The notes beneath the pieces are model-generated. The model searched no databases. It was given only the letters and a program-made list of their open reading frames with translations, and was not told the DNA's origin. Made by a program: the position numbers and the translations under genes. A stretch of 64,000 bases of DNA from positions 186,001 to 250,000 of IMG/VR virus record IMGVR_UViG_3300041411_000129. The stretch is one strand, 5' to 3'. Within the stretch, counting starts at the first letter, position 1, and every line of letters starts with the position of its first letter. Shown here in pieces: positions 11,805 to 13,867 of this stretch.

Positions 11805-11881
11805 TCCGCGATAGCTCAGTTTGGTAGAGCAAACGGCTGTTAACCGTTGGGTCCCTGGTTCGAGTCCAGGTCGTGGAGCCA
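11805..11881 (+). tRNA. tRNA-Asn(GUU)
   Basis: Canonical cloverleaf, loop CTGTTAA, G73, encoded CCA. Confidence 0.95.
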
Positions 11882-11896
11882 ATTTCTTGTTGTAAT

Positions 11897-11974
11897 GGTG
11901 GGCTTAGCTCAGTTGGTTAGAGCAGCGGCGGGCTTTGCTGTGTGTCCTAGGTTCGAATCCTAGAGTCCACCCCA
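11897..11974 (+). ncRNA. tRNA-His-like RNA (G-1:C73) with non-canonical anticodon loop GGGCTTT
   Basis: Intact acceptor GTGGGCT/AGTCCAC, D and T arms, CCA; no Y32/U33/R37. Confidence 0.8.
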
Positions 11975-11981
11975 TATTCTC

Positions 11982-12070
11982 GAGACTGTAGCACAGTGTT
12001 AGTGCGATCAGCAGGCGTGGTAATTCTCGTCGGCTGGAATGCGTGGGTTCGATTCCCAACGGTCTCACCC
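11982..12070 (+). ncRNA. tRNA-like RNA with expanded anticodon arm
   Basis: GAGACTG/CGGTCTC acceptor, GCAC/GTGC D stem, TTCGATT T loop, 20-nt insert in anticodon arm, ends ACCC. Confidence 0.7.
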
Positions 12071-12106
12071 CATTTCTTTGCAGGGATGCGTAATCGAGTA
12101 TTAAGC

Positions 12107-12781
12107 ATGTCTGTTGATATCAGTAACTATCTGATCGCTACACCACTTCCAGTATCTGAAACCAATCCAGTCGCCTTAGAGCTGCTTGGATCTCTGGCAT
12201 TGATTCAATGTCCTGAGGTTGTTTCTCAGCTGGAAGATGGGTCTGTTCAATTCACCGCACCTACTAAAGGTGCGTCCAGTAAGAGTACTCACCGTACTCG
12301 CACTGAATGGAAAGAACCTGAGTACTGGGCGTTGTCTAGTGCAGCTAAGCACTGGAGTCGCCAGACGATGACTGTTACTAAAGTCAACTCTGCTCAGAAG
12401 GTGGTGGTTGCACAGATTCACGTCAAGGATGCTACAACGCCTCCTTTGAAAGTGTTCTGGAACAAAGGTAAGTTGACGATGGGTTTCCGCGGTAGTTTCG
12501 CCGATCCTACAATCGTTAACTATACCCTCCATACCGACGTACCCTTGGGCGTTCCGTTCAAGATCAGTATCGGTGTGACAGCCAGCGGTTCGGTGTCTGT
12601 CAACGCATCATGTCAAGGGGTTCCTTCCCTAAAGAACGCGTTGAAGTTGAGCAGCACTTGGTTTGACCGCGTACTTCAGTTCCATGGCGGCGTCTACAAC
12701 CAAGTCGACTACACCGATCTTACCTCTGACGAGGATGGTTCGATCTGCATTATCAGTGAGTTGTCTACAACTCACGAATGA
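12107..12781 (+). CDS. Polysaccharide lyase family 7 (alginate lyase-like)
   Basis: RTRTEWKE, QIH and QFHGGVYNQ match the three conserved PL7 strands; upstream part of the ORF-track call overlaps a tRNA-like RNA, so start set at ATG 12107. Confidence 0.85.
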   Translation: MSVDISNYLIATPLPVSETNPVALELLGSLALIQCPEVVSQLEDGSVQFTAPTKGASSKSTHRTRTEWKEPEYWALSSAAKHWSRQTMTVTKVNSAQKVVVAQIHVKDATTPPLKVFWNKGKLTMGFRGSFADPTIVNYTLHTDVPLGVPFKISIGVTASGSVSVNASCQGVPSLKNALKLSSTWFDRVLQFHGGVYNQVDYTDLTSDEDGSICIISELSTTHE

Positions 12782-12787
12782 TTCAAT

Positions 12788-12939
12788 GACTTCTATAGCT
12801 CAGTTGGTAGAGCGTCGTCACTCTCTTTAGGTCGCGGGTTCGAGTCCCGTATCCCCAGCAACGGGGATTAGCTCAGTCGGTAGAGCAGAAGAAAATTACG
12901 AGACGAAGGTCGTAGGTTCAATCCCTGCTAGAAGTCCCA
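12788..12939 (+). ncRNA. Nested double tRNA: outer cloverleaf containing a circularly permuted complete tRNA
   Basis: Acceptor ACTTCTA pairs with TAGAAGT at the end of the second unit; ATCCCC/GGGGAT hairpin; swapped anticodon stems TCGTC/GACGA and GAAGA/TCTTT. Confidence 0.85.
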
Positions 12940-12944
12940 ATTAA

Positions 12945-13020
12945 TGATGCAAGCCTGCGCCCGACACTAAGAGCCCGACGATAGTCATATAGCTCACTAC
13001 GTTGGCCGCAGGCGGCATCA
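12945..13020 (+). ncRNA. Rod-like spacer RNA A
   Basis: TGATGC/GCATCA, GCCTGCG/CGCAGGC, CCGAC/GTTGG, GAGC/GCTC, GAC-GATA-GTC. Confidence 0.6.
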
Positions 13021-13028
13021 CCCTACAC

Positions 13029-13105
13029 GCGTTCATAGTTCAGCTGGTTAGAATACTCGCCTGTCACGCGAGAGGTCGGGGGTTCGAGTCCCCCTGGACG
13101 CGCCA
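13029..13105 (+). tRNA. tRNA-Asp(GUC)
   Basis: Canonical cloverleaf, loop CTGTCAC, G73, CCA. Confidence 0.95.
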
Positions 13106-13121
13106 TATTCAAATGCTTCAT

Positions 13122-13248
13122 GATTCGCATAGCTCAGTGGTAGAGCGCCCCCACAACGGTTCGACTCCGTACGCATCCATCCTTCGGTTTGGGTGTGACC
13201 TGGATAACATGGGGGAGGTCGATGGTTCAAGTCCATCTGTGAATCCCA
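13122..13248 (+). ncRNA. tRNA-like RNA (G-1:C73, CCA) with permuted T-arm/acceptor module in the anticodon loop
   Basis: ATTCGCA/TGTGAAT; CCCCC/GGGGG; inner ACGG-TTCGACT-CCGT plus CGCATCC/GGGTGTG. Confidence 0.8.
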
Positions 13249-13254
13249 ATTCAA

Positions 13255-13322
13255 TGATCCTTGCAGCGGCTGCGCCTGAGTAAATGCTGTCTTAACTTGA
13301 CGTTACGGCGTCAAGAGGATCA
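13255..13322 (+). ncRNA. Spacer RNA B
   Basis: TGATCC/GGATCA closing helix; TTGACG/CGTCAA hairpin. Confidence 0.5.
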
Positions 13323-13332
13323 CCCGTTACAC

Positions 13333-13418
13333 GGAGAGGTTCCCGAGCGGTCAAAGGGATCAGACTGTAAATCTGACGCCTAACAGCTTCGAAGGTTCGA
13401 ATCCTTCTCTCTCCACCA
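13333..13418 (+). tRNA. tRNA-Tyr(GUA)
   Basis: Type II cloverleaf, loop CTGTAAA, A73, CCA. Confidence 0.95.
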
Positions 13419-13439
13419 TTTACCGCTTTACCGGTTTAT

Positions 13440-13572
13440 CCCTTGGTCAGCCGAAAGGGGCTGGGCGGCTATCTGTTCGATACGGTACGTGAGCGCTTTA
13501 GGCAGCTGGCCATAGGCCGCTCACGTTCGTCGTTCAGAAGCGTCGAGAGTTCAACTCTCTCACTCGGGGCCA
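13440..13572 (+). ncRNA. Third nested tRNA-like RNA
   Basis: Outer T arm GAGAG-TTCAACT-CTCTC, ACTCGGG-G-CCA end, TGGGCGG/TCGTTCA stem; inner TTCGATA loop plus CGTGAGC/GCTCACG helix. Confidence 0.65.
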
Positions 13573-13576
13573 TACA

Positions 13577-13714
13577 TGACTCCCTGTGGGACATAGGGGC
13601 TATAGCTTCGTTCGTGTTAGTTGTGTGTAGCGGTCTGCTCTGCGGAGCGCGGCCCAACATGGGAACGAGGGTTTCTGATTATCGCCGGGTGTTCGGTAAT
13701 CAGAGATGGAGTCA
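13577..13714 (+). ncRNA. Multibranched spacer RNA C
   Basis: TGACTCC/GGAGTCA closing helix; CTTCGTTC/GAACGAGG; TCTGATTATCG/CGGTAATCAGA. Confidence 0.6.
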
Positions 13715-13722
13715 ACATACAT

Positions 13723-13834
13723 GGCAAGATGATCTCTGCGAAGATGATCGGAGTACACTCTAGAAGAGTGACTTAACTAGTGCAGTTAAGGACCTAACCG
13801 TTACTGAGGTTCGATTCCTCGTCTTGTCTCACCA
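13723..13834 (+). ncRNA. Atypical type-II (Leu-like) tRNA-like RNA
   Basis: GGCAAGA/TCTTGTC acceptor, TAG in central hairpin, 7-bp variable arm, canonical T arm, TC-ACCA end. Confidence 0.55.
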
Positions 13835-13836
13835 AA

Positions 13837-13867
13837 CATAAAGCCCGGCATTCCGCCGGGCTTTATG
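13837..13867 (+). terminator. Terminator ending the RNA cluster
   Basis: CATAAAGCCCGGC/GCCGGGCTTTATG, 13-bp stem. Confidence 0.8.

What the first reader, a model, noticed from the sequence alone, without database searches (positions are those of the whole stretch)
13440..13572. Third nested element with a Thr-like inner acceptor
Outer RNA: CCTTGGT/ACTCGGG (one mismatch), G73 and CCA, D-like GCC/GGC, 7-bp TGGGCGG (13462-68) with TCGTTCA (13530-36), and a perfect T arm. Inside: a TTCGATA T-loop hairpin, then CGTGAGC (13488-94) with GCTCACG (13519-25), resembling the Pseudomonas tRNA-Thr acceptor GCTCATG/CATGAGC as I recall it. An alternative fold exists: ACTCGGG also pairs with CCTGAGT (13275-81), and AGGCAGC (13500-06) pairs with GCTGTCT (near 13286). 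That fold would enclose the whole tRNA-Tyr, so a conformational switch is possible.
Basis: partly seen in the sequence, partly recalled or inferred. Interest (0 to 1): 0.72.

Follow-up and report, generated by a model that had tools for sequence, protein, structure and literature searches.

The report
tRNA-shaped phage RNA with long arm
Window 13440-13572 is a conserved gene in a jumbo phage's tRNA operon for a tRNA-shaped RNA that cannot decode, because a long double-stranded arm sits where the anticodon arm should be; the arm exists in two swappable versions.

Summary
The outer tRNA frame is real. The motif "T arm, 7 nt, N, CCA" occurs seven times in the 254-kb genome, always on the + strand of this cluster; shuffled genomes give about 0.1. 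The inner stem 13487-94/13519-26 is also real, and it is fully re-paired in a second allele.

Three parts of the reading are not supported: the inner "tRNA" (T-loop hairpin and Thr-like acceptor), the TGGGCGG/TCGTTCA anticodon helix, and the switch that would enclose tRNA-Tyr. Seven distinct variants from about 20 contigs fold best as a four-way junction:
- an acceptor stem of 7-8 bp;
- a 5-bp hairpin whose loop ends in an invariant GG;
- a T arm;
- one continuous irregular arm, 13464-13544, with no anticodon loop.

The gene is single-copy. It is far more conserved than its neighbours: 94.7% identity against 71.6% for the gene downstream. It comes in two arm alleles, A and B, that assort independently of the genomic background.

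No Rfam family, ARAGORN model, cultured phage or GTDB genome matches it. My best reading is a non-decoding tRNA mimic that is matured like a tRNA, with the arm as its working part. Its function is inferred, not shown.

The parts
13440..13572 (+). Whole gene of the tRNA-shaped RNA ('el3'), 133 nt
   Evidence: Seven distinct variants in about 20 contigs. The covariance model R1 finds exactly one copy per genome, at 151.5 bits. The single-sequence fold has z = -3.6.
13440..13447 (+). Acceptor stem, 5' strand. It is 7 bp from 13441-47, and an 8th pair C13440:G13569 is possible.
   Evidence: Pairs with 13562-69. Pair 13443:13566 is U.G in 2 variants and U-A in 5. T13444/C13565 is a mismatch in all variants.
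13448..13463 (+). D-like hairpin: 5-bp stem 13448-52/13459-63, loop 13453-58
   Evidence: The stem is invariant. The loop reads GAAA, GCT, ATTT or ACTT followed by an invariant GG (13457-58), where tRNA has G18G19. There are no unpaired nucleotides at positions 8 and 9, unlike tRNA.
13464..13544 (+). Long irregular arm in place of the anticodon arm; no 7-nt anticodon loop
   Evidence: RNAalifold gives 31 pairs in this arm, and 9 of them change on both sides. Single-sequence folds of alleles A and B give the same architecture independently.
13464..13467 (+). Base helix of the arm, 5' strand. It pairs with 13541-44, directly next to the T stem.
   Evidence: Pair 13467:13541 is G-C in 5 variants and A-U in 2. 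Pair 13465:13543 is G.U or A-U.
13487..13494 (+). It pairs with 13519-26.
   Evidence: All 8 pairs are kept in all 7 variants. Six pairs change on both sides between alleles A and B. Within allele A one pair passes from G-C through G.U to A-U.
13495..13518 (+). Apical region of the arm, with the only arm sequence shared by both alleles: AGGC-(A or TG)-GCTGGCC at 13500-11
   Evidence: These columns are invariant in alignment A4 while the flanks differ. The motif forms a 3-4-bp mini-hairpin in both alleles.
13545..13561 (+). T arm: stem GAGAG/CTCTC, loop TTCAACT (TTCGATC in allele B)
   Evidence: The stem is invariant. Both loop versions keep T54, T55, C56, R57 and A58. It is one of only 7 such sites in the genome.
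13562..13572 (+). Acceptor 3' strand (13562-68), G at the discriminator position (13569), encoded CCA (13570-72)
   Evidence: GGGCCA is invariant in all variants. The phage has no CCA-adding enzyme gene.
11805..13866 (+). Context: the one-strand tRNA/tRNA-like gene cluster with a terminator-like hairpin at its end (GCCCGGC 13843-49 / GCCGGGC 13855-61, then TTTAT)
   Evidence: tRNA calls. The terminator is read directly from the sequence. The simple terminator scan did not list it.

Best explanation
13440-13572 is a single-copy gene for a tRNA-shaped RNA of about 133 nt that cannot decode. It lies near the end of the phage's tRNA operon.

The RNA keeps the parts of a tRNA that processing and tRNA-binding factors recognise:
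- a 7-8-bp acceptor stem;
- a canonical T arm;
- an encoded G-CCA 3' end;
- a short D-like hairpin whose loop ends in an invariant GG, which could dock on the T loop to form the tRNA elbow.

The anticodon arm is replaced by one long, irregular double-stranded arm of about 80 nt with no anticodon loop.

Inferred mechanism: RNase P and the usual 3' trimming release it from the operon transcript as they do the neighbouring tRNAs, and it accumulates as a stable RNA. The tRNA frame gives maturation, stability and mimicry. The arm is the working part. It exists as two old alleles, A and B, which have different sequences but the same fold and the same apical motif, and which are exchanged between phage backgrounds.

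The most likely role is a tRNA mimic or decoy, or a tRNA-scaffolded RNA, that binds a host or phage factor. It is not an adaptor in translation.

Shown: the gene, its conservation, the fold outline, the absence of an anticodon loop, and the allele structure. Inferred: processing, stability and partner binding.
For: - Non-random tRNA frame in series with real tRNAs: 7 sites in the genome, all in this cluster.
- Seven variants share the fold. Of the cells in 48 pairs, 95.2% form standard pairs, against 36-42% when partners are slid. Nine pairs change on both sides.
- Alleles A and B each fold into the same four-way junction on their own.
- The loop GG and the T-loop positions 54-58 are invariant while neighbouring loop bases vary.
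- Strong purifying selection. Window versus L007: the element is 94.7% identical, the next RNA 86.5% and the downstream gene 71.6%. Window versus L002: the element is only 70%, although the neighbours are 99.6% and 92% identical. This means cassette exchange.
- The same alleles were recovered unchanged from many independent samples.
- No anticodon loop is found. ARAGORN does not call it even when introns are allowed, and Rfam gives no tRNA, tmRNA or YrlA match even at E up to 10.
- The two sibling elements next to it are tRNA frames with structured inserts and also covary.
- A contig from a cDNA library spans 13444-13820 without a gap at the arm.
Against: - There is no direct evidence of expression, RNA ends or a partner. 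The cDNA-library contig has depth 2.6 and may derive from DNA.
- The seven variants fall into two clades, so most compensatory changes amount to one A/B event rather than many independent ones.
- The middle of the arm (13469-13486 with 13527-13540) is not resolved by covariation.
- The acceptor stem has a mismatch in every variant and the D-like hairpin has no linker. Neither is typical of a tRNA, so RNase P recognition is plausible but untested.
- A purely cis role in processing cannot be excluded.
Confidence: 0.5

Rival explanations
1. It is mainly a cis-acting processing or stability element. On this view the tRNA-like fold is there so that RNase P and 3' nucleases cut the operon transcript at this point, releasing or protecting the neighbouring RNAs (tRNA-Tyr upstream, the 260-nt structured RNAs downstream). 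The arm would have no trans function.
For: It sits between tRNA-Tyr and two further structured RNAs on one transcription unit with a single terminator-like hairpin. tRNA-like punctuation of transcripts is established in organelles (own knowledge).
Against: A cut signal needs only the acceptor/T minihelix. That does not explain near-invariance of about 80 nt of arm within each allele, or the motif shared at the arm's tip. In L007 and L069 the neighbours differ but the element is unchanged.
Confidence: 0.17
2. It is a decaying relic: a former nested tRNA (a duplicate of the neighbouring element at 13122-13248) that has lost its D loop, inner T arm and anticodon and now drifts without function.
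For: Part of the arm's 5' strand in allele A resembles the inner T hairpin and stem of the neighbour (…GTTCGA…GTACG…), read from the sequences. The tRNA features are incomplete.
Against: It is much better conserved than the flanking protein gene and the flanking RNA. The stems are kept by compensatory changes. Both alleles persist unchanged across many samples and backgrounds.
Confidence: 0.1
3. It is an intron-containing tRNA gene: the arm is an intervening sequence that is removed to give a functional tRNA.
Against: For this element no 7-nt anticodon loop or 5-bp anticodon stem remains after any contiguous deletion I could find. ARAGORN does not call it with introns of up to 400 nt, nor any relative with up to 700 nt. 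The base helix abuts the T stem with no variable loop. No group I intron was detected. The phage lacks the splicing endonuclease, RtcB, Rnl1 and Rnl2. No intron-less allele exists in the collections scanned. The cDNA-library contig is unspliced.
Confidence: 0.06
4. One reading: a tRNA nested in a tRNA-like RNA (inner T-loop hairpin plus a Thr-like acceptor) that can refold with sequences upstream of tRNA-Tyr as a conformational switch.
For: All the named complementarities exist. The sibling at 12788-12939 really does contain a permuted tRNA-like module. Pair 34:46 of the small hairpin changes on both sides.
Against: The hairpin is broken in all allele-B variants. The proposed anticodon helix has two breaking pairs and no compensation. 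The fold is about 11 kcal/mol less stable than the rod. The stem sequence is not conserved. The upstream partner is a movable spacer module that is replaced in L070, relocated in L007, and unchanged where the arm allele differs.
Confidence: 0.04

Closest known systems
Canonical bacterial/phage tRNA (Rfam RF00005)
   Same: Acceptor stem, 5-bp T stem with a TTCRA-type loop, encoded N-CCA, GG in the D-side loop, and location in a tRNA operon.
   Different: No anticodon stem-loop, no variable loop, no unpaired positions 8, 9 or 26, and a D stem of 5 bp that starts directly after the acceptor. It is not detected by Rfam or ARAGORN.
tRNA-like domain plus helix 2 of tmRNA
   Same: An acceptor/T-arm minihelix with a CCA end, a reduced D region, and a long irregular helix leaving from where the anticodon arm would be (own knowledge of tmRNA architecture).
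   Different: No G3.U70 (position 3:70 here is U.G or U-A), no pseudoknots, no tag reading frame, about 133 nt instead of about 350. ARAGORN's tmRNA search finds nothing in the window, and Rfam gives no tmRNA match on this element.
YrlA-type bacterial Y RNA (RF02553; Chen et al. 2014, PMC4201824)
   Same: A non-decoding RNA that mimics tRNA and is also found in phages. The sibling element at 12803-12919 matches the YrlA model at 40.9 bits, below the gathering score of 69.
   Different: This element gets no YrlA match. Its tRNA module is not permuted and has free ends with CCA. There is no Ro60/TROVE gene in the phage.
Engineered 'tRNA scaffold' for expressing recombinant RNA (Ponchon and Dardel design) and natural tRNA-linked viral RNAs such as gammaherpesvirus 68 TMERs and mascRNA (own knowledge; not searched for in the paper library)
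   Same: A foreign structured RNA takes the place of, or is attached to, the anticodon arm of a tRNA frame, which provides processing and stability.
   Different: Those are laboratory constructs or eukaryotic/viral Pol III products. No natural phage example came up in my four literature searches.

Membership tests
tRNA (RF00005 / ARAGORN model) | Full cloverleaf recognised by covariance or heuristic models | tested here: not met
   No RF00005 match at E up to 10, even when the element was searched alone. ARAGORN makes no call with or without introns.
tRNA (RF00005 / ARAGORN model) | Acceptor stem, T arm and 3' N-CCA | tested here: met
   Acceptor 13441-47/13562-68, T arm 13545-61, G-CCA 13569-72. 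All are invariant or covarying.
tRNA (RF00005 / ARAGORN model) | 5-bp anticodon stem with a 7-nt loop (U33, purine 37) | tested here: not met
   The consensus fold has a continuous arm with no such loop.
Intron-containing tRNA (group I or protein-spliced) | A ribozyme core or splice motif, and a canonical tRNA after excision | tested here: not met
   No Intron_gpI match. ARAGORN with introns allowed makes no call. No EndA, RtcB, Rnl1 or Rnl2 in the phage. Host enzymes could not be tested.
tmRNA | G3.U70, tag reading frame, pseudoknots | tested here: not met
   Position 3:70 is U.G or U-A. ARAGORN's tmRNA search finds nothing in the window, and Rfam tmRNA models give no match on this element.
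YrlA / Y RNA | Match to RF02553 and association with a Ro60 (TROVE) protein | tested here: not met
   No match for this element. No TROVE gene in the 254-kb genome. The host's Ro60 status is unknown.
tRNA mimic that is processed like tRNA (functional class, not a sequence family) | Cleavage by RNase P at 13440/41, a stable CCA-ended product, modification by T-loop enzymes | not testable with these tools
   Only the structural prerequisites are shown.

The most novel reading that the evidence does not exclude
The element is one of a set of at least four tRNA-framed RNAs in this phage lineage: 12788-12939, 13122-13248, 13440-13572 and 13723-13834. On this reading they act as RNA decoys or adaptors against host factors that recognise tRNA, for example nucleases or toxins that act on tRNA bodies or CCA ends. 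The exchangeable arm (alleles A and B) would set which host factor or host strain is countered. That would be a natural, modular 'tRNA scaffold' system used in phage-host conflict.
Probability: 0.18. Interest if true: 0.8.

Novelty: new variant of a known kind. Interest (0 to 1): 0.55.

Why it matters
Phage tRNA clusters are normally annotated by tRNA finders and read as codon-usage or anti-defence tRNA supplies. Here a conserved, strongly constrained gene in such a cluster escapes every standard detector and cannot decode.

If it is a stable tRNA mimic, three things follow:
- Phages would be seen to build non-coding RNAs on tRNA frames, the trick used in the laboratory to express recombinant RNA.
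- The two old, exchangeable arm alleles would give a direct handle for finding what the RNA binds.
- tRNA counts in jumbo-phage genomes would be shown to miss a class of genes.

Tried and rejected
- Rfam at gathering and at permissive thresholds, on the 2.5-kb region and on the element alone: no family.
- ARAGORN with introns and tmRNA search: calls the two siblings but not this element.
- BLAST against 50,697 phage records: no relative of this element. The sibling at 12789-12939 hits only tandem tRNA pairs of T4-like phages at 68% identity, which reflects linear order and not the nested fold.
- Pattern scans:
  - IMG/VR gave only two related contigs, plus unrelated tRNAs and coding sequence.
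  - JGI metagenomes gave four loci.
  - GTDB genomes gave none.
- Looking for intron-less alleles of the two siblings: none found.
- Searching the phage for Ro60, RtcB, EndA, Rnl1, Rnl2 and the CCA-adding enzyme: all absent.
- The downstream P-loop protein as a possible partner: no tRNA-related similarity.
- RNA evidence: one cDNA library holds a low-depth contig of a relative, which is not enough to show transcription or RNA ends.
- An earlier register of my own for the base helix (13464-68 with 13527-31) was dropped. The G-to-A change at 13467 breaks it, and that change covaries with 13541 instead.
- I compared the arm by eye with a type I-F CRISPR repeat, with SRP RNA domain IV and with a tRNA-Sec anticodon loop. 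Only short chance similarities turned up, and none formed the required hairpins.
- Literature searches for nested or scaffolded tRNA-like RNAs in phages found nothing relevant beyond the YrlA paper.

Full report
**Setting.** The window is bases 186001-250000 of a 253,921-bp IMG/VR virus record with direct terminal repeats, that is, a jumbo phage. It is found in rhizosphere, root, soil and compost metagenomes. Standard tools find five tRNAs on the + strand between 11805 and 13418: Asn, Ser, an odd Leu/Thr, Asp and Tyr. An alginate lyase gene sits among them. A terminator-like hairpin follows at about 13843-13866. The finding lies 21 nt after tRNA-Tyr.

**Checking the observation.** To see which ones exceed chance, I scanned the whole genome, both strands, for a 5-bp stem with a TTCRANN loop, followed by 7 nt, one nucleotide and CCA. 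There are exactly seven such sites. All are on the + strand in this cluster: Asn, Ser, the element at 12789-12939, Asp, the element at 13123-13248, Tyr, and the finding. Twenty block-shuffled genomes gave 0 or 1 sites. The T arm and CCA end are therefore real. By contrast, a 7-mer that pairs at 6 of 7 positions or better with the acceptor 3' strand occurs three times within 260 nt upstream.

**Relatives.**
- No cultured phage has anything similar.
- Pattern scans and exact-protein look-ups of the downstream gene recovered the locus from about 20 contigs of independent samples. These contigs include other genomes of about 250 kb.
- They hold seven distinct versions of the element.
- Allele A: the window, L007, L069. 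Allele B: L002, L073, L074, L089.
- The first 13 and last 17 nt are identical in all versions. Between them, alleles A and B differ in the D-side loop, the T loop and almost the whole arm.

**Structure.**
- RNAalifold on four and then seven variants gives a four-way junction. Its parts are:
  - the acceptor, 13440/41-47 with 13562-68/69;
  - a 5-bp hairpin, 13448-52 with 13459-63;
  - the T arm, 13545-49 with 13557-61;
  - one long irregular arm, 13464-13544.
- The base of the arm (13464-67 with 13541-44) abuts both the hairpin and the T stem with no linker.
- Of the cells in 48 pairs, 95.2% are standard pairs, against 36-42% when the 3' partners are slid by 1-3 columns. Nine pairs change on both sides.
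- Informative pairs:
  - 13467:13541 is G-C in five variants and A-U in two.
  - The eight pairs of the inner stem hold in every variant, and six of them change on both sides between the alleles.
  - Within allele A, one pair passes from G-C through G.U to A-U.
- Alleles A and B, folded separately, each give the same architecture.
- The hairpin loop varies (GAAA, GCT, ATTT, ACTT) but always ends in GG. Both T-loop versions keep positions 54-58. These are the contacts that make the tRNA elbow, which is an inference from tRNA structure.

One of its pairs is broken in all allele-B variants and another in two allele-A variants.
The hairpin pairs have essentially zero ensemble probability.
- The middle of the arm is thus not settled by covariation alone, but the rod is favoured.

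**The proposed switch.**
- The segment 13255-13322 that holds the alternative partners folds on itself and behaves as a movable spacer module.
- In L070 a different module takes its place upstream of tRNA-Tyr, although the element there is identical to the L002 version.
- In L007 it lies about 350 nt upstream of the element, with different genes and no tRNA-Tyr between them.
- L073 has the same spacer as the window but the allele-B arm, which lacks the AGGCAGC partner, with no compensating change.
- I consider the switch unsupported.

**Selection.**

| Comparison | This element | Next RNA downstream | Downstream protein gene |
|---|---|---|---|
| Window vs L007 | 94.7% | 86.5% | 71.6% |
| Window vs L002 | 70% | 99.6% | 92% |

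- Allele B is nearly unchanged in L073 and L089, whose neighbouring genes or RNAs have diverged.
- A 147-kb contig of another run matches the window on both sides but has 113 other letters in place of 13424-13537.
- Each allele is therefore under strong constraint, and the alleles move between backgrounds as cassettes.
- The only arm sequence common to both alleles is the apical motif AGGC-(A or TG)-GCTGGCC at 13500-11.

**What it is not.**
- Rfam gives no tRNA, tmRNA, YrlA or intron match, even with the element searched alone at E up to 10.
- ARAGORN does not call it with introns allowed.
- The covariance model built from six variants finds one copy per genome and no paralogue.
- It is absent from 185,579 species genomes.
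- The phage encodes no Ro60, RtcB, splicing endonuclease, Rnl1, Rnl2 or CCA-adding enzyme.
- No contiguous deletion leaves a normal anticodon arm.

**Context.**
- 12788-12939 is a tRNA frame whose anticodon stem opens into a permuted tRNA-like module: T arm, capped acceptor-like stem, D arm. It scores 40.9 bits on the YrlA model, below the threshold of 69.
- 13122-13248 is a tRNA frame holding a T hairpin and a capped stem.
- Both covary: 44 pairs with 5 compensatory, and 38 pairs with 4 compensatory.
- Part of the allele-A arm of the finding resembles the insert of the second element, which suggests common descent.
- Downstream, 13577-13714 and 13723-13834 are two more covarying RNAs. The second is again a tRNA-like frame, with two hairpins in place of the anticodon arm.

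**Interpretation.**
- The best-supported reading is a non-decoding tRNA mimic that is matured like a tRNA from the operon transcript. The frame would provide processing and stability, and the arm would be the working part.
- With almost no conserved single-stranded stretch, the arm looks more like a protein-binding or double-strand-mimicking module than an antisense RNA. This is inference.
- What it binds is unknown. A decoy for a host factor that recognises tRNA would fit the allele pattern, but this is speculation.
- The only RNA-level datum is a depth-2.6 contig from a wastewater cDNA library. It spans 13444-13820 of a relative without a gap at the arm and may derive from DNA.
- Four literature searches found no description of such RNAs.

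Noticed in passing
window 12788-12939: A tRNA frame (8-bp acceptor with G-1:C73, D arm, T arm, CCA) whose anticodon stem opens into a permuted tRNA-like module: T arm, loop-capped acceptor-like stem, D arm. It matches Rfam YrlA at 40.9 bits (threshold 69). The inner capped stem is swapped between relatives, with compensation. The triplet at the anticodon position is UAC in the window and CAC in the relatives, both valine anticodons.
   Followed up: partly
window 13122-13248: A second tRNA frame, with a 51-nt insert made of a T-arm-like hairpin and a capped stem. The acceptor, anticodon-type stem and inner stem all show compensatory changes. In L002, Rfam's tRNA model spans it at 46.5 bits.
   Followed up: partly
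window 13577-13714 and 13723-13834: Two further structured RNAs before the terminator: a 138-nt multi-branch RNA closed by GACUCC/GGAGUC, and a 112-nt tRNA-like RNA with two hairpins in place of the anticodon arm. Together they have 90 predicted pairs, 9 with changes on both sides. The CCA end is missing in L007 and L089.
   Followed up: partly
window 11982-12069: A tRNA-like gene with a region of about 20 nt where the 7-nt anticodon loop should be. ARAGORN calls it Leu(CAG), or Thr(CGT) with a 13-nt intron. It is present in the window but absent at this position in L070 and L073.
   Followed up: no
window 11898-11974: The gene called tRNA-Ser(GCU) has class I length with no long variable arm, and G instead of U at position 33 in ARAGORN's drawing. 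It is therefore not a canonical serine tRNA.
   Followed up: no
L002 2830-3485 (relative; corresponds to window about 13368-13372): In one relative the anticodon loop of tRNA-Tyr is replaced by an insertion of about 650 nt. It carries a 201-aa ORF with a NUMOD3 motif and a PD-(D/E)XK-type endonuclease domain, so it looks like a homing endonuclease. No group I intron was detected by Rfam, and the ORF's stop codon overlaps the 3' part of the tRNA.
   Followed up: partly
window 12107-12781: An alginate lyase gene (PF08787, E = 2.5e-42) lies inside the tRNA cluster and is conserved there in relatives. This hints at an alginate-producing host such as Pseudomonas.
   Followed up: no
window 13255-13322, 12945-13020; L069 1560-1610, L070 5305-5362: The spacers between the tRNA-type genes are self-folding modules that appear at different positions, or are swapped, in different relatives. 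The cluster is a mosaic of exchangeable RNA modules.
   Followed up: partly
window 11805-13418: The only fully canonical tRNAs of the cluster are Asn(GUU), Asp(GUC) and Tyr(GUA), all with GUN anticodons. The unpaired junction triplets of the two nested elements (UAC or CAC, and AAC) are complementary to GUN anticodons. This could be chance, or could mean that they are valine tRNAs.
   Followed up: no
L007 330-480 (relative): In L007 a different tRNA-like element occupies part of the cluster. It is enclosed by a 13-bp outer stem (TTGAGCTTATCAG/CTGATAAGCTCAA) and contains a T arm (GCGGGTTCGAATCCCGC). No tool calls it.
   Followed up: no
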